64,000 nucleotides of DNA from Scyliorhinus canicula (Eukaryota): NCBI RefSeq assembly GCF_902713615.1, contig NC_052161.1:86778236-86842235 (forward strand), read 5' to 3'. Under the pieces are notes generated by a model. That model ran no database searches. It saw only the letters and a program-made list of their open reading frames with translations, and was not told the DNA's origin. Position numbers and translations under genes: made by a program. Positions 3,481 to 25,000 of the stretch are shown here, piece by piece. The number at the start of each line of letters is the position of its first letter. Within the stretch, counting starts at the first letter, position 1.

Positions 3481-3494
3481 GATGGACCTACAGA

Positions 3495-3625
3495 ATAATA
3501 ATCATCTTTTTATTATCACAAGTAGGCATACATTAACACTGCAATCAAGTTACTGTGAAAAGTCCCTAGTCTCCACATTCCGGCGCCTGTTCGCGTACAC
3601 AGAGGGAGAATTCTGAATTCAGAAT
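3495..3625 (-). mobile_element. SINE 3' fragment
   Basis: Same tail as 1994-2283. Duplicate at about 55705-55840. Confidence 0.7.
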
Positions 3626-5089: not shown

Positions 5090-5123
<34 letters not shown>

Positions 5124-5174
5124 GACCAGGCTGATCACATGGAACGTGAGAGGGCTCAGTATGCCGGTCAAGAG

Positions 5175-5638
5175 CGTTTAGTTATGCTCTTGACTTAGCA
5201 TAAGCTGCTTCCTGATGTGCACTCTGACAAAGGAAGGTTCAGACTTGGAAATAGCTTTAACACATTTATTAAACTGTTAACGATTCTCCTACTTGGATTT
5301 GACTCTCCTGTTAATCCTGCTATAGTTACTCAGACTGACGAACCAGTCTGCTACAATCCAGGTGGTGGGTGTGATGTGTTTCAAATCAACCCTGTGTACA
5401 CACTGAGAGTCTCCACTGGAAAGTGGAAGATCATGTGTGTGGTGTCCTTTTATATGGATTGGTGTAATGCCCCTCTGTGGTAGTGTCACCTCTGTGTGCC
5501 CATTGGTTGTGTCCTATCTTACTGGCCTATTGGTTGAATGTCTGTGTGTCATGTCTCTGGTGCTCCCTCTAGTGTCTAGCTAGTTTTCGTGTATTAACAT
5601 TAACCCCTTGTGTATTTACAGTGATGCACATCACCACA
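5175..5638 (-). mobile_element. Solo LTR inserted in the L1 endonuclease region
   Basis: 464 bp, (T/C)G..CA ends, 5-bp TSD AAGAG (5170-5174 and 5639-5643). TATA and AATAAA lie on the minus strand. Confidence 0.88.
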
Positions 5639-7639
5639 AAGAGGGCTCGTGTGATCTCGCATCTGAAGAGGCTGAAGGTGGACGTGGCAATGCTGCAGGA
5701 GACACACCTGAGGGTAGTGGATCAGACTAGGTTGAGGAAGGGGTGGGTTGGGCAGGTATTTCATTCAGGGCTAGACTCTATAATTAGAGGGTTTGCGATC
5801 TTGATCAATAAGCAGGTGTCATTTGAGGTAGGGAATAATGTGGCAGACTCAGGGAGTAGGTATGCTATGGTGAGTGGGAAGCTGGAGCGGATGCCGGTGG
5901 TATTAGTGACTATCTATGCACCAAACTGGGACAACGCGGAGTTTACGTGTCAGGTGTTAGGGAAGATCCCGGACCTGGACTTACATAGGCTGATCATGGC
6001 ATGGGACTTTAATGCGGTCATTGATCTGAGGTTGGATCAGTAGAGTTCAAGGAACTAAAGGGGTTTATGGAACAGTTGGGGGGGGGGGGTTTGGGTAGAT
6101 CCGTGGAGGTTCGCATGGTCAAGAGCGAAGGAGTTTTCTTTTTCTCCCATGTTCACAAAGTGTACCGTACTGTTTTCATTTTGAATAGGGCTTTGCTGGC
6201 GGGGATGGTAGATGCTGAGTACTCAGCGATTGTTGTGTCGGACCATGCCCCACACTGGGTGGATTTACGGGTGAGCAAGGAGGGGGGTCAGCCTGCAATA
6301 GAGATTGGATGCAGGACTGTTAGCGAATGAGGGAGTGTGCGGACGGGTGGGGGAGGCCATCCAGAATTATTTGGAGATCAATGACACAGGGGAGGTTTCG
6401 GCAGCGACAGTGTAGGAGGCGCTGAAGGCAGTGGTTAGGGGGGAGCTAATTTTGATACGGGCTCATAGGGAGAAGGTGAAGCAGGCAGAGATGGATAGGC
6501 TGGTTAGGGAGATACTCCGGGTGGATAGAAGGTATTCTGACGCCCCGGAGGCGGGACTGTTGAAGGAGCGGCAGATGCTGCAGATGGAGTTTGGTCTGAT
6601 ATCCATAGGGAAGGCGGTGGGGCAGTTGAGGAAGGCGAGGGGGTCGGTATATGAGTATGGTGCTGGCACACCAGCTAAGGATGAGGGAGACAGGAAGAGT
6701 AAAGGACAGAGGAGGGAATACGGTCTTGGACCCAGCGGGGGGGGTGAACGGGGTGTTCAGGGAGTTTTACAGTCGGCTGTATGAGTTGGAGACCCCAGCT
6801 GGGGTGGAGGGGATGAGGCAGTTTTTGGAAGGGTAGAAGTTTCCGAAGGTGAAGGAAGGGTTGGGAGCCCCGATCGGGATTGTAGAAGTAACAGAGGGAT
6901 TGGAGGACATGCAGTAGGGGAAGGCCCCGGGACCAGATGGTTACCGAACTGGAATTTTATAAGAAGCTTTCTGGGATGGTGGGCCTGCTGCTGGAAAGAG
7001 CATTTAATGAGGCAAGGGAGTGAGGTGCCCTTCCCCCCCCAACAATGTCACAGGCTTCAATCTCATTGATCCTGAAGCGGGAGAAGGACCTAGAGCAATG
7101 CGAGACATTCAGATCAATCTCCTTACTGAATGTTGATGCCAAATCGCTGGCCAAAATTCTAGCCTCGAGGATACAGCACCGTGTTCCGGGGGTGATAGGG
7201 GAAGACCAGGTGGGGTTTGTCAAAGGCAGGCAGCTAACGGCCAAAGTTTGAAGGCTCCTGAATGTGACCATGATGCCCGCCGAGGGAGAGGGTGGGAGGG
7301 GGGTCACCATGGATGCGGAGAAGGCCTTTGACCGGATGGAATGGAATTATCTGTGGGAGGTCCTGGGACGGTTTGGGTTTGGGCAGGGCTTTGTTGATTG
7401 GGTTCGGTTGCTGTACCAGGCACCGGTGGCAAGTGTGCAGACAAACCGGGTGAACTCAAACTACTTTAGACTGCATCGGTGTACTTTAGACTCGCTGTAC
7501 GCAGACAACCTACTCCTGTATATTTCTGACCCGTATAGGGGGGATGGGATAGGTTATGCTGATATTAGGGGAATTTGGCCGGTTCTCGGGGTACAAATTG
7601 AATATGGGTAAGAGCGAGGTTTTTGAGATCCATGCGAGG

Positions 7640-7995
7640 GGGCAGGAGAGGAGGCGAGGTGTCAGGAGAGGAGGCTGGGGGGCAGGAGAGGAGGCGAGGT
7701 GGCAGGAGAGGAGGCGAGGTGGCAGGAGGAGGCGAGGCAGCAGGAGAGGAGGCGAGGTGGCAGGAGAGGAGGCGAGGTGGCAGGAGAGGAGGTGAGGTGG
7801 CAGGAGAGGAGGGGAGGTGGCAGGAGAGGAGGCGAGGTGGCAGGAGAGGAGGTGAGGTGGCAGGAGAGGAGGTGAGGGGGCAGGAGAGGAGGCGAGGTGG
7901 CAGGAGAGGAGGCGAGGTGGCAGGAGAGGAGGCGAGGTGGCAGGAGAGGAGGTGAGGTGGCAGGAGAGGAGGTGAGGGGGCAGGAGAGGAGGCTG
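7640..7995 (+). repeat. 20-bp G-rich minisatellite (ggcaggagaggaggcgaggt)n inside L1 ORF2
   Basis: About 18 units read directly. Confidence 0.95.
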
Positions 7996-9740
7996 GGGGA
8001 GCAGCCGTTCAAAGTGGTGGGAGCGAGTTTTCGCTACTTGCGAATTCAGGTGGCACAGGGATGGGAGCAGCTACAAAAATCAAATCTGTCCCAGTTAGTT
8101 GAGCAAATGAAGCAGGATTTCCGGAGGTGGGACATGCTCCCGTTGTCACTGGCGGGGGTGGGTACAGACTAAAAATGACAGTCCTCCCCAGATTTTTGTT
8201 TGTTTTCCAATGCCTCTATAATTTGATACCAAAGGCCTTTTTTAAGCGGGTAAATAGGGTCATATTTCTGTTTGTGTGGGCGGGTAAAACCCTGCGAGAA
8301 AAGACAGTGGTGCCGGGGGTGTGTGTGTGTGTGTGTGTGTGTGATGGGGGGGGGGGGGGGGGGGGGGGGGCCTGGCACTGCCGAACTTTAGGAATTACTA
8401 CTGGACGGCAAATATAGCCATGATTAGGAAGTGGGTAGTGGAGAAGGGGTCGGTGTGGAAGCGGGTGGAGACGGCCTCATGTAAGGGTACAAGTTTGGGG
8501 GCATTGGTAACGGCTCCTCTGCCGTTCTCGCCGGCCCGGTACTCTGCAAGACCGGTGGTAGTGGCGGTTCTGAGAGTCTGGGGCAGTGGCGGAAGCTTTT
8601 GGGAGTGGACGGTGCGTCGGTGTGGGCTCCAGTTTGTGGTAATCACCAGTTTGTACCGGGGAGGATGGATGAGGGGTTTCGGAGGTGGGAACGAACAGGG
8701 AGTGAGAGGCTGGGGGATCTGTCTATTGATGGCAGCTTTCCCTGTTTGGAGTATCTGGAAGAGGAGTTTGAATTGCCGGGAGGGAATGGGTTTCGGTATC
8801 TGTAGCTGAGGGATTTTGTGCAAAGGCAGGTTTCGACCTTTCCGCTTCTACCATCGCAGGGGATACAGGATAAGGTAGTCTCTAGGATGGGAGTGGGCGT
8901 AGGGAATGTATCGGAAATCTATAAAGAACTTAGTAATGGGAGGAAACCCAGATGGATGAGTTAAAGCGTAAATGGGAAGATGAGCTGGGAGGGGAGTTAG
9001 AGGCGGGTCTGTGGGAGGATGTCCTGAGCAGAATCAACACGTCCTCATCATGTGCCAGGCTCAGCCCCTGATACAATTCAAGGTGGTTCACTGGGCACAC
9101 ATGATGGTGGCCCGGATGAGCAGGTTTTTTGGGGTGCAGGATGAGGTGTGCAGGAGGGCCCACAAATCATGTCCACAAGGTTTGGGCACGTCTGAAGCTT
9201 GGGGGATTCAGGCAGAGATTTGCGGATGTCATGTCCACGGTACGAAAAACGAGGGTGGCACCGAATCCAGAGGTGGCGATTTCTGGAGTGTCGAAAGACC
9301 CGGGAGTCCAGGGGGCAAGAGAGGCTGACATCTTGGTCTTTGCCTCCTTGGGAGCCCAGAGGCAGATCTGATTGGCATGGGGAGACTCAAAGCCCCCGAA
9401 ATCGGGGATATGGGTTAGTGACATGGCCGGGTTTCTCAGGCTTGAGAAAATGAAGTTCGCTCTGAGAGGATCAACGTTAGGGTTCGTCAGGAGGTGGCAG
9501 CTGTTTATCAACTTCTTCGGGGAAAATTAAACTGTTAGCAGATACAATAAGGGGGAGGTTAGGGGGTAAAGGGGGGGGGGGGGGAGGGGGGAGTTAGGCT
9601 AGTTTTGGTCTAGATTGGACAGGAACAGTGGGAGATGGAGGGATGCGTTATGCACTGAATTATGTTTACATTTGTATTTGTATCTTTTATTGTCATAAAA
9701 CCATAAATACCTTAATAGAAAATGTTTGTAAAAAAAAAAA

Positions 9741-11373
9741 TGATGCCCTTGGAGGGACGGAGGTGGCAGTCGCTATGGACATGGAGGAGGCCTTTGATTG
9801 GGTAGAATGGGAATATTTGTCGGAGGTACTGGGACAGTTCGGTTCAGGTAAGGGTTTGTGGATTGGGTCCGGTTGTTGTATCGGGCGGCGGTAGCAAGTG
9901 TAAGGACGAATCGGTTGAGTTTGGGGTATTTCGGGCTGCATTGTGGGACAAGGCAGGTTTGCTCACTCTCCCCATTGTTTGCATTGGTGATAGAGCCACT
10001 GGTAATGGCACTGAGAGCTTCAAGAAGCTGGCAGGGCATAGTGCAGGGGAGGGGGCTGGATCACAGGGTCTCGCTATATGTGGACGATCTGTTGCTTTAC
10101 AGACCGGATCCATTGAAAGTATTGGAGGGTTTATGGACATTTTGGTGGAATTCGCGTGGTTTTCCGGGTAAAAATTAAACTTCGGGAAGAGTGAGGTCTT
10201 TTCGATCCAGGCGAGGGGCAGGAGAGGAGATTGGGGTGAGCTGCCGTTTAAGGTAGTGAAAATGAAAATCGCTTATTGTCACGAGTAAGCTTCAATGAAG
10301 TTACTGTGAAAAGCCCCTAGTCGCCACATTCCGGCGCCTGTCCGGGGAGGCTGGTACGGGAATCGAACCGTGCTGCTGGCCTGCTTGGTCTGCTTTAAAA
10401 GCCAGCAATTTAGCTCAGTGAGCTAAACCAGCCCTAATGGGGGTGAGTTTCCGGTATCAGGGCATCCAGGTGGAGTGGGGGTGGGAGCAGCTACATAAAT
10501 TGAATTTGGCACAGTTGGTGGAGCAGATGAAGGATGATTTTAAGAGGTGTGACGTGCTCCCATTGTCATTGGCGAGGGTAGGGTTTCGGAGATCTATAAG
10601 GTGTTAATGGACTGGGAGGGAGCCCCGATAGGAGACGTTAAGTGGAAGTTGGAGGGAGAGCTGGGGAGTGAGGTGGAGGCAGGGTATGGGAGCAGGGTCT
10701 GAGGAGGGTGAATGCATCTTCTTTGTGTGTTGGGCTTAGCCTTATTCAATTTAAGGTACTCCATATGGCGGTGGGCAGAATGAGCAGGTTTTTTGAGGGG
10801 GTGGGGGATAGGGGTGGGCGGTGTATGGGGGGACCTGCGAACCATATCCACATGTTCTGGGCCTGTCCGAAGCTGGAGGGATTCTGGCGAGGAGTCGCTG
10901 GTGTGATGTCTGAGGTGTTGAGGGCGAAGGTTGTCCCAAGTCCAGAAGTGGCGATTTGTGGAGTGTCGGAAGACCCGGAGTCCAGGGGGGGGGAGAGGCC
11001 GATCTTTTCACCTTTGCCTCTCTGGTAACCCGGAGACAGATCTCGCTGGCAGGGAGGGAATCGGGGTTGCCAAAACCAGGGGTGTGGGTCAGCGACCTCG
11101 CAAAATTCCTTCGGTTAGAAAAAATTAAGTTCACCTTGAAAGGGTCTGTGGAGGGTTTGCCCGGAGATGGAAACCGTTTATCGACTTCTTCAAGGATAGT
11201 TAAGAAGTCAGCAGTAGGGGGGGGGGGGGGGGTTAGAAAATGGTGGCAGGGAGAATGGAGGGGAACGGCAGGGAGGGTTTGTTAGGCAATTTCCTGTTCT
11301 CTTTTTGGTTTTGGTTGTGCTTGTTGTATGTATACAGTATAAATGCCTCACTATAAACATTTATTTAAAAAAA
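9741..11373 (+). mobile_element. Second L1 RT/3' fragment with poly(A)
   Basis: DMEEAFDWVEW, SLYVDDLLL, HMFWACPKL, ending aaacatttatttaaaaaaaa. Confidence 0.85.
10259..10434 (-). mobile_element. Short SINE present only in duplication copy 1
   Basis: Absent at the homologous site near 63560. Same family as 29769-29960. Confidence 0.85.
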
Positions 11374-11568
11374 AGAACTGGGGGAAGTCATGGAGAGCAT
11401 CAACTCCATGCAGGCAGGGTAGACGTTGGGACCAGATGGATTCCCGGCGGACTTCCAGAAAACATTTGCAACAGCACTGGCCCCACATTTGCGAGAGATG
11501 TTCGCATACTCACTAGTAAGGGGCTCCCAGCCACCAACAGTAGCACAAGCATCAATATAGTTCATACT

Positions 11569-11856
11569 TGTGGTGAACGTATTATAGTAACCATTCACCA
11601 CTGTACTACATTGGACCACGGTGTTGCCCATGTGGGCTCCACCTATGGACCATTGTACTGTACTACACTGATTGTATCATGTTGGTGCCATTGTGGGCTC
11701 CGCCCCTGGCTCCGCCCCCTTGAGGGGAGGTAAAAAGAGCAGCTTACCCTGTAGGCGGCTCTCATTGTAGAGCAGTCGCAGGCAGGCACTGTTCTAGTCG
11801 ATTAAAGCCACTGTTCACTTCAACTCTCTGTCTCATGTGAATTGATTGCTGCATCA
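11569..11856 (+). mobile_element. Solo LTR related to the LTRs of the 14702-18752 Gypsy
   Basis: TGTGGTGAACG..GCATCA, sharing the gcagtcgcaggcaggcac..attaaa block. Confidence 0.85.
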
Positions 11857-12628
11857 ATAAACAACAAGGACAAAGACTCGACTGAGTGCGGGTCCTCCAG
11901 ACCCATTCTCGCTGCTCAATGTAGACTCAAAGATCCTGGCGAAGGCCTTGGTGAGGTGGCTAGAGAGTGGCATTCCAGAGGTAAGTTGCGGAAGATCAGA
12001 GGGGCTTTTCAAGGGTAGGCAGCTAACATCGAACTTCAGGGGCCTGCTGAATATGACCCCATCTGAGGAGAGAACATTTGAAGTGATCATCTCCCTGGAT
12101 GCAGAAAAGACCTTCGACAGAATCGAGTGGAGGCTTCGACCAGGATTCCTGCCTGGGTGAAACTCCTGTACAACGTTCCCATAGAGAGCGTACGGACAAA
12201 CACCACCAGCTCTAAATACTTCCAGCTGCACAGAGGCACGAGGCCCAGGTTCCTCTTCCTGTTCAGATCCCTCCCGATCTACAGCCCCAAAGCCTTTTTC
12301 AACATGGTCAACAAACTAATCATGGCATTTGTGTGGCGGGGGGTGGAGGGGGAAGAGATCACGAAGATCCAAAGGAAGGTCCGACAAAGGAATAGAAGGA
12401 TGGGTGGCCTGGGCCCTCCCAAACCTACAATCAAGAGTGAGGGGATGGATGAAGGAACCGGGAGCAGCGTGGGCGAAGATTGAGGACAGTTCCTGCTCAA
12501 GGATATCCCTCTGAGCCCTTGTCACAGCCGCTCTCCTACCCCTCCCGGCCAAATACCCAAGAAGCCCAATAGTGGTAGCCACGCTCCAAATTTGGCATCA
12601 AATGAGGCAACACTTTGGCCTAACCAGA

Positions 12629-12975
12629 GGGCAGCACGGTAGCACAGTGGTTGGCACAGTTGCTTCACACCTCCAGGGTCCCAGGTCCAATTCCCAGCTG
12701 GGTCACTGTCTGTGCGGAGTCTGTACGTTCTCCTCGTGTCTGCATGGGTTTCTTCCGGGTGCTCCGGTTTCCTCCCACAGTCCAAAGATGTGCAGGTTAG
12801 GTGGATTGGCCGTGCTAAATGTTACCTCAGTGTCCAAAAAGGTGAGGTGTGGTTACTGGGTTACGGGGATAGGGTGGAGGCGTGGGACTTAAATAGGGTG
12901 CTCTTTCCAAGGCCCAGTGCAGACTCGATGGGCCGAATGGCCTCTTTCTGCACTGCAAATTCTATGATTCTATAT
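12629..12975 (+). mobile_element. tRNA-derived SINE
   Basis: gggcagcacggtagcacagtggtt head and (ttctatga) tail. Confidence 0.9.
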
Positions 12976-13177
12976 GTCTCCCATCTGCAATAACCATAGC
13001 TTCATTCCTGCATTAATGGATGCCACCTTCTAAATGTGGAGACAGGACGAGGGGACACTGATGGTTTGGGATATATACACGGATGATCAAGTAGCGACCC
13101 TGGGGGAACTCACGGAGATGCTCCAGTTAGTTACCAAGGCAAAATGAGCTCCGATCATTCAGGTCAAAAACCTCCTC

Positions 13178-13510
13178 TGTAAGCAAACTATGTTATTCTC
13201 TAAGTCTGAATAAAGATTGTAGACTTCCAGTTAACACAAATACTTTATTCAGTGGGTTTGTTCTGTTTCCAGAGCTTAACTAGATATAATACAGCCAAGA
13301 GTTATGACCAGTGAAGCTAAGGTAAGCTGCCTATACTGAGCTGTCTCTCTCCGCTGCTGCTCACTAGCCCTGTGCTTCTGGAAGAGGCAGATCCTCCCTT
13401 GGGCTGGACCCTTTATACCCGTCTCTGATGCTGCCCTCTGGTGATGCTGTGGCTGTTACATCTGTCTGTAGTCCCTGGTGTATGTGCAGATGTGTGTACA
13501 GATCACTACA
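13178..13510 (-). mobile_element. Solo LTR
   Basis: TG..CA ends, minus-strand TATA (gggtataaag) and AATAAA. TSD not clear. Confidence 0.7.
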
Positions 13511-14034
13511 GAAATGACAATGTAGCCCCCGATATCAGGACAAGCTAGTAGCAGAACTGCTGGACACGAGCGACTCAGGGAAGGGAAACAGGACGGACTG
13601 GTAGGGGAGACTGTTGGAGGAGGTGTGCTCCCCTCAGGATGAGACAAGGACAGAAAGGAATAGGAATAGAGGTGAGGGAGGGGGGGGGGGGGGGGGGATT
13701 CTGAATCAAAGCACTTTACAGGGTGAATTCCACATGCATGGGACTGAGCCAAACGCAGCTAAAGGCGGTGCACAGAGCGCACCTAACCAGAACCCGAATG
13801 AGTGGGTCCTTCCTGGAGGTGGAGGGCCAGTGAACGGTGCCAGGGAGGCCCGGCCAAACATGCACACCCATATATTCGGGGCCTGCCCCAGGCTTGTCGG
13901 GTTCTGGACAGCCTTCTTTGAGGCAATGTCATGGTTGTGGGAGTGAGAGTGGAGCCATGCCTGAAAGTGGCAGTGTTCAGGGTATCAGATCAGCCAGAGC
14001 TCCTTACAGAGAGAGGGGCAGACCCCCTAGCCTT

Positions 14035-14400
14035 TGTAGTGATCTCCATGTGTGCATGTGCAGAAGGGGTTAATGTGTAATCAGTAGCACCAGATGATCA
14101 CTAGAGGGCCGGACCAACAGGGGTATAAAGGCAACCACATTGGGTCTCTCTCGCTTTTGTGGGTGTACTGTGACCAGGGAAATAGCAGATTAGTTCAGAT
14201 GACTAGCGGAGTTATGTATAGTTACTGTAGTTAGATCTTGTCAACCTTACCATTAGTATCAAAGTTAAAATAAAGAACTCATGCAATTATTGTTATAGTT
14301 ACTCAATAAACCTTTTGTTACGACTGGACGAGTTTGAGTCTTCTTCATCGAGATTCAGAAGACCTCATCACTAACCGCGGTTTGAGTAACACATATTACA
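14035..14400 (+). mobile_element. Solo LTR
   Basis: TGTAGT..ATTACA ends, gtataaa and aataaa on the plus strand. TSD not clear. Confidence 0.72.
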
Positions 14401-14465
14401 CTCCGTAGTATATCAAGACACAGAGAGAAGTGTAATAAAAGATAATACAGCAGCGTAATTCATCA

Positions 14466-17400
14466 AATTTACAGTGTAGAAGGAGGCCATTCGGCCCATC
14501 AAGTTTGCACCGGCCCTTGGAAAGAGCAGCCTACTCAAGCCCACACCTCCACTCTATCCCAGTAACCCCACTCAACCTTTTTGGTGGCTAAGGACAATTT
14601 ATCATGGCCAATCCACCTAACCTGCACATCTTTGGACTGTGGGAGGAAACCGGAGCACCCGGAGGAAACCACGCACACACGGGGAGAACGTGCAGACTCC
14701 ATGTGGCGAATGTATTGCTACTACAATTCACCACTGTATTGTACTGGATTATGTTGATGCCCTTGTGGCCTCCGCCTGTGGCTCCGCCCCCTCGGGGGTG
14801 GTATATAAATCTGCAGCTTGTAGGCGGCACTCAGTACAGAGCAGTCGCAGGCAGGCACAGATCTAGCTTATTAAAACCACTGTTCACTTCTACAAAGCAT
14901 CTCGTGTAAATTGATGGTCGCATCAATTTAATTAGCTACGATATCGCAATGGAAGCCACCCTCAAACCTGATCGACTGGAACTCGACCCACAGGCAGCTG
15001 AAGCCAAAGGAATCTTCTCACATTGGCTCCGCTGCTTTGAGGCCTACCTCGTTGCCTCCTCCTCACTCGCCATCACCGAGGCACACAAGCTGAGTCTCCT
15101 CCACATCTGGGTGAGCCACAGAATCTCAGTACTAATCGAAGACGTGACCACGTACGCAGACGCGTTCGCAATCCTGAAAAGACATTATGTGAGGCCGGTG
15201 AACGAAGTGTTAGCGCGGCATCTCCTCACCACACGTCGTCAACGCCCCGGGGAATCACTGCAGGAATATCTGCGCGACCTGAGGGTACTCGCTCGGAACT
15301 GTAACTACAAGGACGTCACGGCCTCGCAGCACATGGAACTCGTCATCCGGGACTCCTATGTGGCTGGAGTCCGGTCCAACTATGTCAGACAGCGCCTGCT
15401 CGAAAAGGGCGCCCTCGACCTAGAAGAGACGGTAAAACTATCCACCTCGTTAGAGGTAGCCTTCCAGAGCGTAAATGCTTTCCCCTCTGACCACGCAATT
15501 TCCTCGTGGGCGCCGGAGGCGCGACCATCCCCCGACCCGAAGGTGTCCCATGTGCCGCGTGGCTGCCCGCCCAACCCGGAGGGCCGCCCTGCTATTTCTG
15601 CGGTCAGAACCAGCACCCCAGGTAACGTTGCCCAGCTCAGAATGCGACCTGCAGCGACTGCGGCAAGAAAGGACATTTTGCCAAAGTCTGCTTGGCCCGA
15701 CTCAAAGTTCCAAAATCGCAGGCCGGACTCACAGGCCCGCAGACCCCACAGCGTGACTGCATGCCTGCCGGTACCGCCCCCTTCTGACGCGTCATCCGCC
15801 TCGTGCTATCTGTGGGGGCCGCCATCTTTAACTCTGCCCGACACGTGCGACTCATGGGGGCCGCCAACTTGGCCGCCATCTTCAACCCAGCCCGCCATGT
15901 GCGACTCATGGGGGCCGCCATCTTCAATGCCGCCCAACGCGTGCGACCGATAGGGGCCACCATCTTGGCTGCCATCTTGGGACCACCCCGCTACCACCGT
16001 CCACACCGGCTACCCGCAGCTTGGCGCTGTCACTCTCGACCAGTCATGACCTAAGCACCTCAAGAACTCCATGATGACCGTCCGGGTTCATGGGTGCGAA
16101 ATGCACTGTCTGTTTGACTCTGGGAGCACGGAGAGCTTCATCCATCTGGACACGGTGAGGTTCTGCTCTCTCCAGATTTCCCCACATCCCAAACAATCTC
16201 GCTTGCTTCTGGATCACATTCAATGCAGATCCGGGGGAACAGTGTCGCGAACCTCGCGATACAGGGCACCGAGTATGCCAACTTTAAACTCTATGTCCTC
16301 CCCCATCTCTGCGCTCCTCTCTTGTTAGGACTGGATTTCCAGTGAAACCTCTGAAGCCTGACCCTCACGTTCGGTGGACCCCTACCCCCTCTCACCGTAT
16401 GTAGCCACGCGACCCTTAAGGTCGCCCCCTCCCTCGCTCTTCGCGAACCTCACCTCCGACTGTCAACCCGTCGCCACCAGGAGCAGGCGGTATAGTGCCC
16501 ACAATAGGACTTTTATCAAGTCCGAGGTCCAGCGGCTCTTGAGGGAAGGGACCATCAAGGCCAGTAATAGCCCCTGGAGAGCCCGAGTGGTGGTCATCAG
16601 GACTGGGTAAAAGAACCGGAGGTTGTAGACTATAGCCAGACCATGAATCGGTACACGCACCTCGATGTGTACCCCCTTCTCCGCATAGCAAACATGGTTA
16701 ATCAGATTGCACACTACCGGGTTTTCTCCACGGTAGATCTGAAATCCGCATGCCATCAGCTCTCGATCCGCTCGGCAGACCGCCACTACACTGCCTTTGA
16801 GGCAGACGGCCACCTCTTCACTTCCTCAGGGTCCCCTTCGGCGTCATCAATGGGGTCTCGGTTTTCCAAAGAACGATGGACCGAATGGTGGACCAGTACG
16901 GGATGTGGGCCACGTTCCCGTACTTGGATAACGTCACCATCTGCAGCCATGATCAGCAGGACCACAACGCTAACCTTCAGAAGTTCCTCCAAACCGCCCA
17001 AGCCCTTAATCTCACCTACAACAAGGAGAAATGCGTTTTCCGCACAACCTGACTAACCAAGCATTGTGGAAAACGGAGTCAGAGGGCCCGACACCGACCG
17101 CATGCGCTCCCTCCTGCAACTCCCCCTTCCCCACTGCTCCAAGGCCCTGAAAAGATGCCTGGGGTTCTTTTCATATTATGCCCAGTGGGTCCCTAACTAT
17201 GCAGACAAAGCCCGCCCACTAATCAAAGCCACCATCTTCCCCCTGACGACTGAGGCCTGCCTGGCCTTCAGCCACATCAAGGCAGACATTGCCAATGCAC
17301 GCTGTGGACGAGTCCATCCCCTTCCAGGTGGAGAGCGACACGTCAGATGTCGCCCTGGCCGCTACCCTTAAGCAGGCAGGCCCGTGGCCTTCTTTTCCTT

Positions 17401-18845
17401 CAACGCCTCCAAGGTTCAAGACTCCTCTGTCAAAAAGGAAGCTCGAACCTCCAGATGCCCTGTCCTGCGGCACATGTGCCAGCGCGCAAGATGACCGACT
17501 CCGGGCCATCCACAATGACCTCTGCCACCCAGGGGTCACCCGGCTTCTGCACTTCATCAAGGCCCGCAACCTGCCCTACTCCACCGAGGAGGTCAGGGCC
17601 ATGACCAAGGACTGCCAAATCTGCGCGGAGTGTAAGCCGCACTTCTATCGACCGGACAAGGCCCACCTGGTGAAGGCATCCCGCCCCTTTGAGCGCCTCA
17701 GCATCAATTTCAAAGGGCCCCTCCCCTCCACTGACTGCAATGTGTATTTTCTCAACGTCGTTGACGAGTATTCCCGTTTCCCCTTTGCCGTCCCATGCCC
17801 CGACATGACCGCGGCCACTGTCATTAAGGCCCTGCACAGCATCTTCACCCTGTTTGGTTTCCCCACTTACATCCACAGTGACCGGGGCTCCTCGTTTATG
17901 AGCGACGAACTGCGTCAGTACCTGCTCGGTAAAGGCCGTCCTTCTGGTGCTACGGTCTAGAAGTCTCCCGGTTTCCCGCTGGCAGGAGGTCCTCCCCAAC
18001 GTGCTCCACTCCATTCGGTCGCTCCTCTGCACAGCCATGAACAAGACCCCTCATGACCGTCTATTCGTCTTCCCCAGGAAATCCTCCAGAGTCTCGCTTC
18101 CGTCCTGGCTGACAACACCGGGGTCTGTCCTCCTCCGGAAGCACGTGAGGAGCCATAAGTCCGACCCCCTGGTTGAGAGGGTCCAGCTCCTACAAGACGG
18201 CCGACAAGATACAATCTCCCTCCGGGATCTGGCACCCGCCGGTTACCCAGCGACCTTCACCCCCCACACCGAACATCGCCCCTGTCCCTACACCCCCCCT
18301 CCCCCATCGCCGACCCACCGTGATGAAGCTCCAGACGACACGCTCCAAGAGTCAACGAACCCAACACCTGTGCCCGCAGCGACGAGTTCAACACCCGTGC
18401 CCGCAGCAAAGCCGGAGCTGAGACGATCACAGAGAACGATCAAGGCGCCGGACAGGCTTGATCTGTGAGCCCACTTCACCCCTGCTGGACTTCAATTTTT
18501 TTAAATTTTTTTGGACGTCAATTTTTTAACAGGTGGTGAATGTGGTGAACGTATTGCTGCTAAAATTCACCATTGTATTGCACTGTATTACGTTGATGTC
18601 CTTGTGGGCTCCGCCCCCTCGGGGGTGGTATATAAAACTGCAGCTTGTCGGCGGCACTCAGTACAGAGCAGTCGCAGGCAGGCACAGATCTAGCTGATTA
18701 AAACCATTGTTCACTTCTACTAAGCATCTCGTGTGAATTGATGGTCGCATCACTCCTGACAGACGGTGACCCAAGCCAGGAATCGAACCTTGGGACTCTG
18801 GAGCTGTGAAGCAACTGTGCTAACCACCGTGCTACCATGCTACCC
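14466..18845 (-). mobile_element. SINE split by the Gypsy insertion (14466-14701 and 18753-18845)
   Basis: The two halves join into one SINE across the TSD. Confidence 0.85.
14702..18752 (+). mobile_element. Gypsy LTR retrotransposon with both LTRs (14702-14925 and 18541-18752), inserted into a SINE
   Basis: gag ORF 14949-15953, protease FDSGS, RT YLDNVTI, integrase HSDRGSSF, and a polypurine tract before the 3' LTR. TSD CTCC(A/T). RNase H is partly deleted. Confidence 0.93.
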
Positions 18846-19100
18846 ATATGAAAGAGCCTTTTGACAAAAGAGCCTTTGCCTCCCTGATCACCCGCCGGAG
18901 AATCCTGCTCGGTTGGCGATCAGCAGCGCCATTCAAGGCTGCAGATTGGCCGGCAGACCTGGCAGAATTTCTCCAAATGGAGAAAATAAAATGTTTCCAT
19001 CTGGGGGTCGGAAGAGGGCTTCCACCGCAGGGGACTGGGCAAGGTGGAGCCCAAACCAAACTATAAATAGACACTTGTAAGTACGTGCTGTGGCCATACT
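18846..19100 (+). mobile_element. L1 3' fragment
   Basis: AFASLITRRRILLGWRS motif, as in the other L1 C-termini here. Confidence 0.7.
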
Positions 19101-19302
19101 GGGGACTGTAACATATGTATGCTGGCTAAAGGGGTGTCACAGCCATAGTGGGAGGGAAGACACTGGATTGGAAAGAGATGTGTTGGCTTCAGTTTCTCTT
19201 TTCCATTTTCATTTTTGCTGCGGTTTTGTAATTTGGAATTTATGAATTGTTGAATATAAAATATGAAAATCCAATGAAAGCATTTCTATTTCGTTATTTA
19301 AT

Positions 19303-19507
19303 TTTTAATTTAGTTTTTCCAATTAAGGGGCAATTTAACATGTCCAATTTACCGACCTGCACATCTTTGGGTTGTGGGGGTGAAACCCACGCAAAAACAC
19401 TGGGAGAAATGTGCAAACTCCACACGGACAGTGATCCGGGGCCGGATCGTACCTGGGATTTGGCGCCATGAGGCAGCAGTGCCAACCACTGTGCCGCCGT
19501 GCTGTCC
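19303..19507 (-). mobile_element. tRNA-derived SINE
   Basis: Conserved head and body. Confidence 0.88.
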
Positions 19508-19519
19508 TGAAAACATTTA

Positions 19520-20125
19520 AAAAAAATAAATACTGTGGTTACCAGAGCAGGTCAGAGGCTGGGAATCCTGTGGAGAGTAACTCACCTCCTGACTCCCCCC
19601 AAAGCCCGCCCACCATCTACAAAGACACAAATCAGGAGTGTGATGGGAAACTCTCCCACTTGCCTGGACGAGTGCAGCTCCCAACAACATTCGAGAAGCT
19701 CGACAACATCCAGGACAAAGCAGTCCGGCTTGACTGACACGCTAACCACAAATATTCACTCCCTCCTCACTGACGCACAGCGGCAGTCATGTGTAATGTC
19801 TATAAGATGCACCGCAGCCACTCGCCAAGGCTTCTTTAACAATACCTTCCAAACCCTCCACCACTACCGTCAAGAAGGACAAGGGGGGGGGGGTGGGTGG
19901 TCAGCAGATACATGGGGAACACCCACCAGCTGCAAAGATCCCCTTCCAAGCCCCACACACACCATCCCCACTGGCAAATATACTGACCCTTCACTGTCAC
20001 TGGGTCAGAATCCTGGAGTTCTCTCCCTAACAGCGCCATGGATGTACCTACACAACGCAGGGACTGCAGCGAGTCCAAGATGGCGGCTCACCCACCATCT
20101 TCTCAAGGGGGGCAATTAGGGGTGG
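19520..20125 (+). mobile_element. CR1-like LINE 3' fragment
   Basis: Degenerate RT C-terminal motifs (LDNIQDKAVRL, IYKMHC-like). Confidence 0.7.
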
Positions 20126-20194
20126 GGGGATAAACGTACCAACACATTCTAACCGGTCCCTGGAGATGCGCTCTCTCCCCGAGGAATGAGTTAC

Positions 20195-20563
20195 CTGTGA
20201 TCACGTCAAGATGTATTTTCGCGCGAGCTTCAGAAGACTTGAATCTGAATTCACACACGAAATAGCCGACGTCCCCAGGCTGAACGTTGGAGACAGTGAG
20301 CGAGAAGTTTCCAGACTGCCGCCTGCTGGATATGCGGCTCCTCTTCACCAGGTCAATGTTCCCCCTGCTGGGAATATTGCTGTAGTCATAGCGTAAGATC
20401 AATTTAGCAGACTGGTCGCTCTCGCTCGGATGCCATTTCCACCCGCCAGACATTTTGGTTATCGGGGTCTGACTCGGATTGTTCACCTGGCAGAGGAAGG
20501 TCACCGTGTCACCCACAGTGGCGTAGATTTTGTCCCTTTCAGTCACCGGCCGGGAATACGATA
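20195..20563 (-). CDS. Ig V-set exon, CD4/LAG-3 family domain-1-like
   Basis: 369-nt exon, phase 1 at both ends. The acceptor is (ct)n..ttggcAG at 20565-20564 and the donor is ACAG|GTAAC at 20194. It reads (V)SYSRPVTERDKIYATVGDTVTFLC..GGWKWHP..RQSGNFSLTVSNVQPGDVGYFVCEFRF..IHLDVIT, with B-strand Cys, C-strand Trp and a DxGxFxC F strand. Family assignment is from remembered similarity to LAG-3/CD4 D1, not a search. Confidence 0.85.
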
Positions 20564-20574
20564 CTGCCAAGGTG

Positions 20575-20950
20575 AAACACAGAGAGAGAGACAGGGTGAG
20601 AGAGACGGAGAGAGAGAGAGAGAGCGACAGAGTGAGAGAAAGAGAGATGGAGTGAGAGAGACAGCATGAGAGACAGGGTAAGAGTCAGATTGAGAGAGAC
20701 AAAGAAAGAGAGAGAGATAGAGAATGACACACAGAGACACCAAGAGACGGAGACAGACAAATAGAGAGCGACAGAGAGAGAAAGAGAGGGAGGCAGACAG
20801 ATAGGGAGAGCGACGGAGACAGAGAGAGCAGGAGAGAGAGAGAGAGAGGTGGAGAGCGAGACGGAATGGGGGAAAGATGGAGAGTGACGGAAAGAGTAAA
20901 ACGGAGGGAGAGAGAGAGAGTGTGAGAGAGGGAGAACAACAGAGACAAAG
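20575..20950. repeat. Degenerate (GA)n-rich tract next to the V-exon acceptor
   Basis: Seen directly. It is pyrimidine-rich on the gene strand. Confidence 0.9.
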
Positions 20951-20984
20951 AGTCAATTACAGTTTCAAACACAAGTCAATCTGC

Positions 20985-21705
20985 CACTCCCAGGACAGGG
21001 ACAGCACAGGGTTAGATACAGAGTAAAGCTCCCTCTACACTGTCCCCATCAAACACTCCCAGGACAGGTACAGCACGGGGTTAGATACAGAGTGAAGCTC
21101 CCTCTACACTGTCCCCATCAAACACTCCCAGGACAGGTACAGCACGGGGTTAGATACAGAGTAAAGCTCCCTCTACACTGTCCCCATCAAACACTCCCAG
21201 GACAAGTACAGCACTGGGTTAGATACAGAGTAAAGCTCCCTCTACACTGTCCCCATCAAACACTCCCAGGACAGGTACAGCACGGGGTTAGATACAGAGT
21301 AAAGCTCCCTCTACACTGTCCCCATCAAACACTCCCAGGACAGGTACAGCACGGGGTTAGATACAGAGTAAAGCTCCCTCTAAACTGTCGCCATCAAACA
21401 CTCCCAGGACAGGTACAGCACGGGGTTAGATACAGAGTAAAGCTCCCTCTACACTGTCCCCATTAAACACTCCCAGGACAGGTGCAGCACGGGGTTAGAT
21501 ACAGAGTAAAGCTCCCTCTACACTGTCCCCATCAAACACTCCCAGGACAGGGACAGCACGGGGTTAGATACAGAGTAAAGCTCCCTCTACACTGTCCCCA
21601 TCAACCACTCCCAGGACAGGGACAGCACGGGGTTAGGTACAGAGTAAAGCTCCCTCTACACTGTCCCCATCAGGACAGGTGCAGCACGAGGTTAAATACA
21701 GAGTA
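20985..21705 (+). repeat. 69-bp tandem repeat, about 10 units, in the leader-to-V intron
   Basis: Unit cccaggacaggtacagcacggggttagatacagagtaaagctccctctacactgtccccatcaaacact. Confidence 0.95.
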
Positions 21706-21714
21706 AAATCTTAC

Positions 21715-21772
21715 CATGTTGCAGTGATGTTAGGAACAGCACCAGCTCATATATTCTCCCTTGAGCACACAT
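21715..21772 (-). CDS. Signal-peptide exon of the same Ig gene (MCAQGRIYELVLFLTSLQH+G)
   Basis: ATG at 21772, then 19 codons plus 1 nt, then donor GTAAG at 21714. G+TA gives Val in frame with the V exon. Hydrophobic core LVLFLTSL. A likely acceptor (tttctaacttcacAG, 21834-21833) implies the exon starts at 21832 with a 5' UTR. Confidence 0.8.
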
Positions 21773-22094
21773 TTCAGTGATGGGTATTTTTCCTGTGCTT
21801 TTGTTAGTGCAGCTCGCTGATCTTTACCCCTTCTGTGAAGTTAGAAATTGATCATTTTGGTTATTGAATGTTTGGTGTAGTTAAGTCACTGATGTTGTTC
21901 ACAACTGTGGACACATGACCACCTTCGAAATGAGAGTACAGCTTGGATTCAGAAACTAGCAGCAGTTTTATATGACTTGCGCAGACCTCTTGTGGCGTTA
22001 CTGAAATGAAAATCCGCATGGACCCGTGCTGCCAATGGCATCACTCACGAACACTGACACTTGCTAAAGACCTCCATATATATATATATATAAT

Positions 22095-25000
22095 TGATAT
22101 GCCATCAATTAAGACGGAGAACGCAGAGTGAATTAACTATGGCTTTAATTGACTTACAACCGAACTGGCAGTGTGGCTCAGAATGAGGCAGTGTGAAAGG
22201 TCGGCAGCCAGGCCCTAGCGGGAGGAGCATGGGCCGAGCCAAAACCGTACAACATGTAATATAGTGTCAATACCATGCAATACGTAATACTGTGGCAGCA
22301 CAATACAACACAGTGGTTTCACCACATTCACCCCCTGTTTAAAAAAAGTCCGTCGGGGATGAAGTGAAGTGAAGCGTACAAATTGCGTCAGAGATTGAGC
22401 CTGATTGTCCGCCGTGACCGCCTGAGGTGTGGGCATAGTAGTCGGCGGAAGCGTTGAGGCTGGCGTGTCCGGGAGAATGACAGCTTCTGTGTTCCCAGAT
22501 GGGGGGGGGCAGCAACGGGGGAAGGGGGTATAGGGTTGGGTTGAGTAGTAGTAGTAGAGGGGAGGAATAGGGTCGGGAGCACCGGTAACAGTTGCTGGGG
22601 AACCTGCGGATGCCAAATCTCTAAGGGAGACTGTGTCCTCCTGCCCGTCATGGTGAGCCACGTAGGCGTACTGGGGATTCGCATGGAGAAGAAGAACCCT
22701 CGCGACCAGAGGATCTGACTTATGAGTCCTCACATGCCGTCGGAGGAGGACGGGCCGTGGAACCGTCAGCCAGGTTGGGAGCGAGACCCCCGAGGTGGAC
22801 CTTCTGGGGAAGGCAAACATCCTCTCGTGGGGGTCACATTAGTAGCGGTGCAGAGAAGCGACCGGATGGATTGGAGTGCCTCGGGAAGGACCTCCTGCCA
22901 GCGGGAGACTGGGAGACCTCTAGACCGTAGGGCCAGAAGGACGGCCTTCCAGACCGTCGCATTGTCCCTCTCCACCTGTCCCTTTCCCCGGGGATTGTAG
23001 CTGGTCATCCTGCTGGAGGCGATGCCCTTGCTAAGCAGGAATTGACGCAGCTTATCACTCATGAAGGAGGAACCCCGATCACTCTGGATGTAAGTGGGGA
23101 AACCGAACAAGGTGAAGACACTGCTCAGGGCCTTGATGACGGTGGCAGAGGTCATGTCAGGGCATGGGATGGCAAAAGGGAAGCGTGAGTACTCGTCAAG
23201 GATGTTGAGGAAGTACACGTTACGGTTAGTGGAGGGGAGGGGCCCTTTGAAATCCATGCTGAGGAGCTCAAAGGGGCGTGAGGCCTTTACCAGGCGTGCT
23301 CTATCTGGCCGATAGAAGTGCGGTTTGCAGTCCGCGCAGACCTGGCAGTCCCTGGTCGTGGTTCTGACCTCCTCGATGGAGTAAGGCAGGTGACGGGCCT
23401 TGATATAATGGAAAAGCCGGGTGACCCCCGGGTGACAGAAGCCATTGTCGAGGGCCCGCAGTTGGTCAACTTGTGCGCTGGCACAAGTACCGCTGGAAAG
23501 GGCATCTGGGGGCTCATTAAGCTTCCCAGGACGATGCTGGATATCATAGCTGTTGGTAGAGAGTTCGATCCTCAGCCGTCAGGGGAAATGTATTGGTTTT
23601 AATAAGTGGGCGGGCTTTGTCCGCTTAGTTGGGGTCCCACTGTGCATAGTAGGAGAAAAGCACCAGGCATCGTTTGAGGACCTTGAGGCTGTGAGGAGGG
23701 GGAAATTCTGTGAGGGGGCGCATGCGGTCGGGGTCGGGCCCTCTGACTCCGTTTTCACGACATAGCCGAGGATGGCCAGCCAGGTTGTGCGGAAAATGCA
23801 CTCCTCCTTGTTGTAGGTCAGGTTCAGGAGCTGGGCAGTGTGGAGGAATTTCTTGAGGTTAGCGTCGTGGTCCTGCTGATCATGGCTGCAGATAGTGACA
23901 TTATCTAAGTACAGGTATGTAGCCCGCAGCCCGTACTGGTCCACCATTCCATCCATCACTCGCTGGAAGACCGAGACCCCATTGATGACGCCAAAGGGAA
24001 CCCGGAGAAAGTGGTAGAGGCGGCCAGCTGCCTCAAAGGCAGTGTACGTGCGGTCCTCTGGGCGGATTGGGAGCTGGTGGTATGCGGACTTCAGGTCCAC
24101 GGTGGAGAAGACCCGGTACTGCACAATCTGATTGACCATGTCAGATATGCGGGGGAGGGGGTACGCATCGAGCTGCGTGTACCGGTTGATGGTCTGACTG
24201 TAGTCGATGACCAACCAGTGCTTCTCCCCAGTCTTGACGACCACCACCTGTGCTCTCCAGGGGCTGTTACTGCCCTCTATGATCCTTTCTCTCAGGAGTC
24301 GCTGAACCTCCGACTTGATGAAGGTCATGTCCCGAGCACTGTATTGTCTGCTCTTAGTGACGACGGGCTTACAGTCTGGAGTGAGGTTGGCAAAGAGCGA
24401 GGGAGGGTGACCCTAAGGGTCGAGAGGCTACAGATGGTGAGAGGCGCCAGGGGTCCATCGAACTTCAGGGTTCGGAGGTTGGACTGGAAGTCGAGACCCA
24501 GAAAAATTGCCACGCAGAGGTGTGTGAGGTCAAAGAGCTTAAAATTTTTGAAAGATGTGCCCCGTACCATGAGGGTCACAGCACAGTACCCACGGATTTG
24601 CTCGGTATGCGACCTAGAGGCCAGGCAGATTTTCTGGGCTGCGGGTAAAATGGGAAGGGAGTAGCGCCGGACCGTGTCCGGGTGTATAAAGCTGTCTGTG
24701 CTCCGGAGTCAAAATGGCAGGCCGTCTCGTGGCCATTGATCCGGACCACCATTGTAGATTTAGCGAGGCCACGAGGTTGAGACTGGTCTAGGGTGATTGA
24801 GGCGGCCACGGGACGGCGGGCTGGCTTCGGACGGCGGGTTGGGTTCGGACAGCAGGCGGGCTGGTCGAGAGTAGCGGAGGCCAGCTGATGGACGGGCGAG
24901 CCGGAGTCCCAGGAGGTGGCGGTGGACTTCAAAAATGGTGGAGATGGCAGCCCCCGCGATTCGCACGTGGCAGTTGGCGTCGAGGATACCGGACCCCGCG

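What the first reader, a model, noticed from the sequence alone, without database searches (positions are those of the whole stretch)
20195..21832. 5' end of a CD4/LAG-3-like receptor gene buried in transposons
Seen: a 58-nt leader exon and a 369-nt V exon join in phase 1 to give MCAQGRIYELVLFLTSLQHVSYSRPVTERDKIYATVGDTVTFLC...HLDVIT. Established: the CD4 and LAG-3 D1 domains are V-set. Human LAG-3 D1 as I recall it has VTWQHQPDS..GRLPLQPRVQL..RQRGDFSL, and this exon has GWKWHPSES..GNIDLVKRSRI..RQSGNFSL. Inference: this is a shark CD4/LAG-3 family member. The tail motifs that separate the two (Cx(C/H) versus (F/Y)xxL(D/E)) are outside the window. Shark CD4 and LAG-3 have been described, so novelty depends on which copy this is.
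Basis: partly seen in the sequence, partly recalled or inferred. Interest (0 to 1): 0.75.

Follow-up and report, generated by a model that had tools for sequence, protein, structure and literature searches.

The report
Catshark CD4 gene, first two exons
This is the start (signal-peptide exon and first immunoglobulin-domain exon) of the small-spotted catshark CD4 gene, which was hand-annotated at exactly these coordinates in a 2023 paper; the one new point is that this 5' module sits in three intact tandem copies, more than one of which seems to be expressed.

Summary
On the minus strand, a 58-nt leader exon (window 21715-21772) joins in phase 1 to a 369-nt V-set exon (20195-20563). RNA contigs from two runs carry exactly this junction.

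The window is chr16:86778236-86842235 of a 4.22-Gb genome. Takizawa et al. 2023 (PMC10768021, Suppl. file 3) place S. canicula CD4 at sScyCan1.1 chr16, reverse strand, 86751677-86800007, starting MCAQGRIYELV. That start is the ATG at window 21772. The finding is therefore the published CD4 gene, not LAG-3:
- D2, D3, D4 and the cytoplasmic exons follow on the same strand.
- D2 and D4 carry WxC.
- The tail reads RPLPPLPRYCPH (CxH).
- LAG-3, with tail FPALD, lies upstream head-to-tail.

Novelty: already known.

One addition. The leader+D1 module occurs three times in tandem, all intact, upstream of a single D2-tail body. The D1 exons differ by 13-15 residues. A cassette-2-like D1 sits at about equal depth to cassette 1 in two RNA runs, and other runs hold cassette-3-type words. 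The paper calls these copies pseudogene fragments. I could not tell whether the expressed forms are alternative cassettes or divergent alleles.

The parts
21715..21772 (-). Leader (signal-peptide) exon, coding part, 58 nt, ATG at 21772 (= chr16:86800007). It ends in phase 1 with a gtaag donor.
   Evidence: sequence; translation MCAQGRIYELVLFLTSLQH + first base of V; the published model starts at 86800007. RNA contigs join its 3' end to D1.
21773..21832 (-).
   Evidence: Inferred. The X15 contig continues 206 letters past the D1 acceptor, which is 148 letters beyond the 58-nt coding leader. Only the first 30 of those letters were shown. This 100-nt upstream stretch is 98-99% identical in the three cassettes.
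20564..21714 (-). Intron 1 (1151 nt). It holds a 69-bp satellite (20985-21672, 10 copies, 96% matches) and a GA/CT-rich tract (20581-20848).
   Evidence: The same satellite is about 11.8 kb long in cassette 2.
20195..20563 (-). D1 exon: a complete V-set Ig domain in one exon, phase 1 at both ends. This is the MHC class II-binding domain of CD4.
   Evidence: The paper states that shark CD4 and LAG-3 have no intron in D1. An exact-match RNA contig covers 20321-20564.
1..20194 (-). The first 20.2 kb of intron 2 (about 25.6 kb in all), filled with retroelement remains. D2 lies outside the window at chr16:86772645-86772869.
   Evidence: Integrase at 17247-17957 (+).
22769..24412 (-). LTR-retroelement pol remnant (reverse transcriptase plus integrase) 1 kb upstream of the ATG. 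It is not part of the gene but bounds the promoter region.
   Evidence: RVT_1 1.6e-20, rve 3.3e-18.
51223..64000 (-). Paralogous copy (96.5-96.9% identical) of chr16:86777217-86791095. This is the intron-2 part of the next tandem unit, whose leader and D1 exons (cassette 2) lie just beyond the window's right end.

Best explanation
The finding is exon 1 (signal peptide) and exon 2 (D1, a V-set Ig domain) of the CD4 gene of the small-spotted catshark, Scyliorhinus canicula. This gene has already been described. Shown here: the two exons are spliced together in RNA; D2, D3, D4 and the cytoplasmic exons follow on the same strand over the next 41 kb; the tail carries a CxH motif next to RPLPPLP; LAG-3 lies upstream head-to-tail. 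Inferred from what is established for CD4 in other vertebrates, not tested here: the leader directs the protein into the secretory pathway and is cleaved; D1 sits at the membrane-distal tip of a four-domain V-C2-V-C2 rod and contacts MHC class II; the CxH tail recruits the kinase LCK through a zinc clasp, so that the molecule acts as the co-receptor of helper T cells.
For: Coordinates: the window is chr16:86778236-86842235, so the ATG at window 21772 is 86800007. Takizawa et al. 2023, Suppl. file 3, give S. canicula CD4 as sScyCan1.1 NC_052161, reverse strand, 86751677-86800007, starting MCAQGRIYELV...SYSRPVTERDKIYATVGDTV. Sequence: the best full-length D1 matches are shark CD4 at 39-46% identity, E 1e-19 to 1e-23, against 20% identity to the same genome's LAG-3 D1. 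Architecture: D1 at 86798434-798, D2 at 86772645-869, D3 at 86769682-770038, D4 at 86762265-567, cyt1 at 86759103-200 and cyt2 at 86757469-597, all minus strand and in order. Exon phases are 1/1. WxC is present in D2 (KWTC) and D4 (VWTC), and the tail reads RPLPPLPRYCPH. Synteny: LAG-3 exons lie upstream on the same strand, with an FPALD tail at 86991831-87000537. Expression: spliced leader-D1 contigs with zero differences from the window.
Against: Nothing contradicts it. Three lines are weaker than they sound. A D1-only tree leaves shark CD4, LAG-3 and Ig kappa V in one unresolved group. Structure search returns generic V-set proteins (SCN2B, MPZ, JAML, CXADR; mouse LAG-3 at rank 26) and does not single out CD4. 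PDB sequence search gives JAML, CXADR and light chains first. Tissue of expression (thymus-high) could not be checked because run metadata are coded. MHC II and LCK binding are inferred, not shown.
Confidence: 0.95

Rival explanations
1. The window's leader+D1 is only one of three functional, interchangeable 5' cassettes of CD4. Each has its own promoter, leader and D1, and each is spliced to the single D2-tail body. On this reading catshark T cells can make CD4 with different MHC II-binding domains. This extends the main explanation rather than denying it.
For: Three cassettes lie in tandem on the same strand. In each one the ATG, donor, acceptor, phases and open frame are intact. The leader exon and the 60-nt splice flanks differ by 0-1 nt, while the D1 exons differ by 19-22 nt and 13-15 residues. 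The assembly holds only one D2-tail body downstream of them in the same orientation. Runs X16 and X17 hold two D1 forms at similar depth (4.7 vs 5.3; 19.3 vs 29.9). The second form carries 8 of 8 cassette-2-specific letters. In X16 both forms run into one leader-spliced unitig whose depth (11.1) is about their sum. Runs X29 and X30, from the same study, hold 0.66 of the cassette-3 D1 words, more than the 0.46 that cassettes 1 and 2 could supply. The D1 exon diverges 4.9-6.0% against 2.8-3.4% in the flanks (p 0.005-0.04).
Against: No read or contig was seen that joins a cassette-2 or cassette-3 D1 to D2. The second RNA form has 4 extra differences from cassette 2, so it is not that exact copy. 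A depth ratio near 1:1 is also what two alleles of one exon would give. pN/pS is 0.6-1.4, which is what neutral drift gives. The assembly in this satellite-rich region has gaps and may be wrong. The paper regards the extra copies as pseudogene fragments.
Confidence: 0.35
2. Cassettes 2 and 3 are dead duplicates, as the paper says. The extra D1 forms in RNA are divergent alleles of the single functional D1 exon, perhaps produced by gene conversion from the neighbouring copies.
For: Depth ratios are near 1:1 in three samples. Different samples of one study favour different forms. The X1 contig is a mosaic of cassette-1 and cassette-2 letters plus private changes, as conversion or recombination would produce. 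pN/pS is about 1.
Against: Alleles differing by 8% over 150 nt would be extraordinary for a single-copy exon. All three cassettes keep perfect splice signals and open frames.
Confidence: 0.45
3. The exon belongs to LAG-3 or to another V-set receptor family (JAML/CXADR, NITR, CD300, B7) rather than CD4.
For: PDB sequence hits and structure hits are led by JAML, CXADR, MPZ and light chains. The D1 tree is unresolved.
Against: There is an exact coordinate match to the published CD4 model. The tail is CxH, not (F/Y)xxL(D/E). LAG-3 is a separate gene 190 kb upstream. D1 is 20% identical to that LAG-3 D1 against 42-46% to shark CD4.
Confidence: 0.01

Closest known systems
Scyliorhinus canicula CD4 as predicted by hand in Takizawa et al. 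2023 (Front Immunol 14:1267743, Suppl. file 3; sScyCan1.1 NC_052161, reverse strand, 86751677-86800007)
   Same: It is the same locus, with the same start codon to the base and the same leader and D1 peptide. It has the same exon logic (no intron in D1, an extra cytoplasmic exon), the same CxH tail, and the same position downstream of LAG-3.
   Different: Nothing differs in the gene itself. The paper mentions 'fragments of two CD4 pseudogenes' without showing them. Here the two upstream fragments turn out to be complete, intact leader+D1 cassettes, and at least one further D1 form is seen in spliced RNA.
Scyliorhinus torazame CD4 cDNA LC770928 and nurse shark KC707916/AGN91182
   Same: These are orthologues. 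S. torazame has the same leader (MCAQGRIYELVLFLTSLQHVSYS). The D1 framework is conserved (GDTVTFLC, GGWKW, KRSR, SGNFSL, GYF.C.F), as is the tail (RPLPPxP..CPH).
   Different: D1 is 46% identical to nurse shark. At several variable positions, as far as the OCR-damaged supplement text could be read by eye, S. torazame agrees with cassettes 2 and 3 (T74, K86, K100, A129) rather than with the window's cassette 1. If so, cassette 1 carries the derived states.
Tetrapod CD4 (human, mouse)
   Same: It has the four-domain V-C2-V-C2 ectodomain, WxC in D2 and D4, a zinc-clasp motif in the tail, and LAG-3 as a head-to-tail neighbour.
   Different: Tetrapod CD4 splits D1 over two exons and uses CxC. The shark gene encodes D1 in one exon, uses CxH, and has a longer tail with an extra exon and a class I SH3-ligand-like RPLPPLP.
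LAG-3 (same genome, chr16:86991760-87000537)
   Same: It is a paralogue with the same domain plan and strand, and likewise has no intron in D1.
   Different: Its D1 is 20% identical. Its tail has FPALD, i.e. (F/Y)xxL(D/E), encoded in one exon, and has no Cx(C/H).

Membership tests
CD4 | Ectodomain of four Ig-like domains, V-C2-V-C2, encoded in order on one strand | tested here: met
   D1 is Pfam V-set. D2, D3 and D4 exons were found by tblastn with nurse shark and horn shark CD4, in order on the minus strand.
CD4 | WxC motif in strand F of both D2 and D4 (a CD4/LAG-3 family hallmark, Takizawa 2023 section 3.1) | tested here: met
   D2 reads ...HAGKWTCNVEF and D4 reads ...EAGVWTCEIIQ.
CD4 | Cx(C/H) LCK-binding motif in the cytoplasmic tail | tested here: met
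   The exon at 86757469-86757597 encodes ...TERPLPPLPRYCPHQPRRGR.
CD4 | Gene lies downstream of LAG-3, head-to-tail | tested here: met
   LAG-3 D1, D2 and D4 and an RRRNFPALDVTL tail lie on the minus strand at 86991831-87000537, upstream of all CD4 cassettes.
CD4 | Shark-specific: D1 encoded by a single exon; tail with an extra exon | tested here: met
   There is a single 369-nt D1 exon. Two cytoplasmic exons were seen (cyt1 ...RRLRHPLCREHSHQ|gt, cyt2 with CxH). The published model runs on to 86751677.
CD4 | Closest sequence relatives are CD4 of other species | tested here: met
   The top single-domain hits are shark CD4 entries at 39-46% identity, E 1e-19 to 1e-23. The D1-only tree is unresolved.
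CD4 | Highest expression in thymus; on helper T cells | not testable with these tools
   RNA contigs show that the gene is transcribed and spliced, but tissues of the coded runs are unknown. Thymus-high expression was shown for S. torazame and nurse shark in the paper.
CD4 | Binds MHC class II through D1 and LCK through the tail | not testable with these tools
   Inferred from family knowledge only.
LAG-3 | (F/Y)xxL(D/E) inhibitory motif in a tail encoded by one exon, with no Cx(C/H) | tested here: not met
   This gene's tail is split over several exons and carries CPH. FPALD belongs to the separate upstream gene.

The most novel reading that the evidence does not exclude
Catshark CD4 may not have a single D1. 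Three intact promoter-leader-D1 cassettes stand in tandem upstream of one D2-tail body. Their D1 exons differ by 13-15 residues, many of them in the BC, C'C'', DE and FG loops. More than one D1 form is present in spliced RNA. If the cassettes are used alternatively, or serve as conversion donors that keep very divergent D1 alleles in the population, this would be a co-receptor with a diversified MHC class II-binding domain. To my knowledge that has not been described for CD4 in any vertebrate.
Probability: 0.35. Interest if true: 0.65.

Novelty: already known. Interest (0 to 1): 0.3.

Why it matters
As a gene call it adds nothing: the exons, their coordinates and their identity as shark CD4 were published in 2023. 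It does confirm that a reader without tools can recognise a split Ig-receptor 5' end inside repeat-rich shark DNA.

The surrounding structure is worth a short follow-up. The paper dismissed the extra copies as pseudogene fragments, without detail. The two upstream ones are complete leader+D1 modules whose D1 exons diverge faster than their flanks, and transcriptome contigs contain more than one D1 form. CD4 D1 is the surface that touches MHC class II. A multi-cassette or hyper-polymorphic D1 in an early-branching jawed vertebrate would bear on how co-receptors and polymorphic MHC co-evolve.

Tried and rejected
1. The search for homologous proteins with the 122-aa D1 gave no hit at E <= 1e-10, because its length filter admits only 67-213 aa proteins. 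With horn shark CD4 residues 30-235 it found only the query itself. Neither blank says anything about relatives.

2. PDB sequence search and Foldseek against Swiss-Prot models return generic V-set proteins (JAML, CXADR, MPZ, SCN2B, light chains). They show the fold but cannot assign the family. I considered a JAML/CXADR-type reading early (stated at 65%) and dropped it.

3. A D1-only maximum-likelihood tree (17 rows) has only 3 well-supported inner branches. It leaves shark CD4, LAG-3 and Ig kappa in one open group, so it neither supports nor refutes.

4. Positive selection on D1: Nei-Gojobori pN/pS is 0.97, 1.42 and 0.59 for the three pairs. That is indistinguishable from 1, so I do not claim it. 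The variable residues lean towards loops (14 of 20, by eye, against the DSSP strands), but this is not significant.

5. I tested whether the two inverted D2-tail bodies (B, C) are the lost partners of cassettes 2 and 3. Body B carries intron-2 homology up to about 3.8 kb from where D1 should be. It then switches to sequence homologous to 86888933-86892585, with no D1 or leader. The history is complex and I did not resolve it.

6. Findings search by words returned nothing.

7. The first attempt at the second run search failed because the machine was busy; it was repeated.

Full report
**1. What is in the sequence**

Read on the minus strand, the window has an ATG at 21772. It is followed by 58 coding nucleotides ending ...GCAACATG|gtaagat (exon 21772..21715). 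Next comes an intron of 1151 nt, then an acceptor ...ccttggcag|TATCG at 20563. The following exon is 369 nt and ends ...GTGATCACAG|gtaactc at 20195. Both junctions are in phase 1.

The 122 in-frame residues of the second exon match Pfam V-set (E 4.7e-9, above the curated cut-off). With a nine-sequence alignment they fold into a confident V-type Ig domain (mean pLDDT 89.9, nine or ten strands).

Intron 1 holds ten copies of a 69-bp satellite and a GA/CT-rich tract. An integrase ORF lies in intron 2. A reverse transcriptase plus integrase remnant lies 1 kb upstream of the ATG. The description '5' end of a receptor gene buried in transposons' is accurate.

**2. Is it transcribed and spliced as proposed?**

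Yes. I laid the assembled contigs of four public runs on window 20120-20600. In X15, a 450-nt contig matches 20321-20564 without a single difference. It then continues for 206 letters that do not match the intron. The first 30 of those letters are the exact reverse complement of the last 30 nt of the leader exon. X16 has a 74-nt contig with the same junction. It also shows that these runs, whose kind was not on record, are RNA.

**3. What gene it is**

The window is chr16 (C16):86778236-86842235 of a 4.22-Gb genome, so the ATG is at 86800007.

A search of 1.84 billion representative proteins gave large multi-Ig proteins with summed scores. Apart from these, the best full-domain matches were:
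- great white shark 'CD4-2 tandem duplicate 2' (44% identity, E 9e-24);
- horn shark 'CD4-like' (39%);
- nurse shark AGN91182 (46%);
- sevengill shark 'CD4-like'.

AGN91182 is the KC707916 product, which Takizawa et al. 2023 (PMC10768021) re-identify as CD4.

[quoted passage not shown] The listed sequence begins MCAQGRIYELV...SYSRPVTERDKIYATVGDTV.... The start coordinate and the peptide coincide with the finding. The finding is therefore the published catshark CD4 gene.

**4. Independent checks of membership**

- With nurse shark and horn shark CD4 as queries, the remaining exons follow on the minus strand: D2 86772645-869, D3 86769682-770038, D4 86762265-567, a first cytoplasmic exon (...RRLRHPLCREHSHQ) at 86759103-200, and a second at 86757469-597.
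- Exon phases are 1/1 throughout the Ig exons.
- D2 and D4 carry the family's WxC motif (KWTC, VWTC).
- The second cytoplasmic exon encodes RPLPPLPRYCPH, i.e. the CxH motif that marks chondrichthyan CD4.
- LAG-3 is a separate gene on the same strand further upstream: D1 87000196-537, D2 86997761-955, D4 86994079-372, tail ...RRRNFPALDVTL.... This is the head-to-tail arrangement the paper describes.
- The window's D1 is 20% identical to that LAG-3 D1, against 42-46% to shark CD4 D1.
- The single-exon D1 agrees with the paper's statement that shark CD4 and LAG-3 lack the D1 intron.

Three tests did not discriminate:
- PDB sequence search gives JAML, CXADR and light chains first.
- Foldseek gives generic V-set proteins, with mouse LAG-3 at rank 26.
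- A D1-only tree is largely unresolved.

**5. How it works**

Shown: the exon structure, the splicing, the domain type, the tail motif and the synteny.

Inferred from established CD4 biology, not tested here:
- The leader is a cleaved signal peptide.
- D1 forms the membrane-distal tip that contacts MHC class II.
- The CxH tail forms a zinc clasp with the CxxC of LCK.

The paper supports the third step indirectly, by citing zinc-dependent binding of trout CD8alpha CxH to LCK.

**6. What is around it**

The DNA of the D1 exon region occurs three times on chr16, all on the minus strand. Each copy has its own leader exon:

| Cassette | Leader | D1 | Intron 1 |
|---|---|---|---|
| 1 (the window's) | 86799950-86800007 | 86798430-798 | 1151 nt |
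| 2 | ~86865174-231 | 86851734-852102 | ~13 kb (the 69-bp satellite there spans ~11.8 kb) |
| 3 | ~86914074-131 | 86911773-912141 | ~1.9 kb |

All three keep the ATG, gt donor, ag acceptor, phases and an open frame. The leader exons differ by 0-1 nt, and the 60 nt of splice flanks around D1 by 0-1 nt. The D1 exons differ by 19-22 nt and 13-15 residues.

The tandem unit (52-66 kb) runs from a 29-bp satellite in intron 2 to a 28-bp satellite upstream of the promoter. It does not include D2 to the tail. Only one D2-tail body follows the cassettes in the same orientation.

Two further bodies lie 0.22-0.37 Mb downstream in inverted orientation, 97-99% identical to body A in their exons. Neither has a D1 or a leader:
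- B runs from D2 to cyt2.
- C has D2 to D4 only and contains a gap.
- B's intron-2 homology stops about 3.8 kb short of where D1 would be.

This is what the paper summarises as 'fragments of two CD4 pseudogenes ... details not shown'.

**7. Are the extra cassettes silent?**

Apparently not, but the evidence is incomplete.
- Over 20414-20564, X16 and X17 each hold two D1 forms. One is identical to cassette 1 (depth 4.7 and 19.3). The other has 11-12 differences (depth 5.3 and 29.9) and carries all 8 cassette-2-specific letters in that range plus 4 others.
- In X16 both forms end 30 nt after their last difference. They are continued by a single leader-spliced unitig of depth 11.1, about the sum of the two. 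Both forms therefore appear to be spliced to a leader exon, which is identical in cassettes 1 and 2.
- X1 holds a third, mosaic form that runs 20 nt into the intron, so it may be DNA or unspliced RNA.
- A word search with the cassette-3 D1 exon finds four other runs of the same study. Two of them hold 0.66 of its words, whereas cassettes 1 and 2 together could supply only 0.46.
- No contig covered the D1 donor, so what the other D1 forms are joined to downstream is unknown.

**8. Selection**

The D1 exon differs by 4.9-6.0% between cassettes, against 2.8-3.4% in 6-9 kb of aligned non-satellite flanks (Fisher p 0.005, 0.019, 0.036). Within the exon pN/pS is 0.97, 1.42 and 0.59, i.e. about 1. 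This fits relaxed constraint as well as a mix of purifying and diversifying selection, so I make no claim of positive selection.

Of the 20 variable positions, 14 fall outside the modelled strands, in the BC, C'C'', DE, EF and FG loops. I mapped them by eye against the DSSP assignment. This is a tendency, not a significant one.

At several variable positions the S. torazame cDNA appears to agree with cassettes 2 and 3 rather than with cassette 1. I read this by eye from the OCR-damaged supplement text.

**9. Verdict**

The gene is already known at these exact coordinates, so novelty and interest are low.

The residual interest is the tandem triplication of an intact leader+D1 module with more than one expressed D1 form. 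That may mean alternative cassettes (about 35%), divergent alleles maintained by conversion (about 45%), or assembly and individual differences. Long-read cDNA and a phased assembly from one animal would settle it.

Noticed in passing
G000 C16:86851734-86865231 and 86911773-86914131 (loci L006-L008, L012-L013); beyond the window's right end: Two further complete leader+D1 cassettes of CD4 lie on the same strand, with intact ATG, splice sites and frames. Their D1 exons are 5-6% different from the window's, while leader and splice flanks are nearly identical. The 2023 paper mentions them only as pseudogene fragments.
   Followed up: yes
window 20414-20564 as read in runs X16, X17, X1; runs X29, X30 for cassette 3: RNA contigs hold a second, cassette-2-like D1 form at about the same depth as the exact cassette-1 form. 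X1 holds a mosaic form. Other samples of the same study hold cassette-3-type words. Alleles and paralogues could not be separated.
   Followed up: partly
G000 C16:86423940-86457655 (+) and 86528891-86543990 (+) (loci L014-L022): Two inverted D1-less copies of the CD4 body lie here. B has D2, D3, D4, cyt1 and cyt2, all open and 97-99% identical to the intact gene. C has D2-D4 only and contains a 100-N gap. Upstream of B, the intron-2 homology ends about 3.8 kb short of D1 and switches to sequence homologous to 86888933-86892585.
   Followed up: partly
window 20985-21672; C16:86853319-86865166; C16:86757641-86759064 and 86760595-86762264: The 69-bp satellite of intron 1 (10 copies here) is about 11.8 kb long in cassette 2. 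It also fills, in opposite orientations, two stretches of the same gene on either side of the first cytoplasmic exon, between D4 and the second cytoplasmic exon.
   Followed up: partly
G000 C16:86991831-87000537 (-) (loci L028-L029): The LAG-3 gene: D1, D2 and D4 exons and a tail exon encoding ...SRRRNFPALDVTLTTVEASVKKV*. It lies upstream of all three CD4 cassettes, head-to-tail.
   Followed up: yes
window 41637-47046 and window about 47000-47100: A 5.4-kb array of a 28-30-bp satellite marks the upstream end of the tandem unit. It is immediately followed by a 100-N assembly gap. A 29-bp satellite (C16:86775774-86777215 and window 47894-49669) marks the other end of the unit.
   Followed up: partly
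window 22769-24412 (-) and 17247-17957 (+): LTR-retroelement pol remnants (RVT_1 plus rve; rve plus Integrase_H2C2) lie 1 kb upstream of the CD4 start codon and inside intron 2. The upstream one is shared by all three cassettes, so it predates the triplication.
   Followed up: partly
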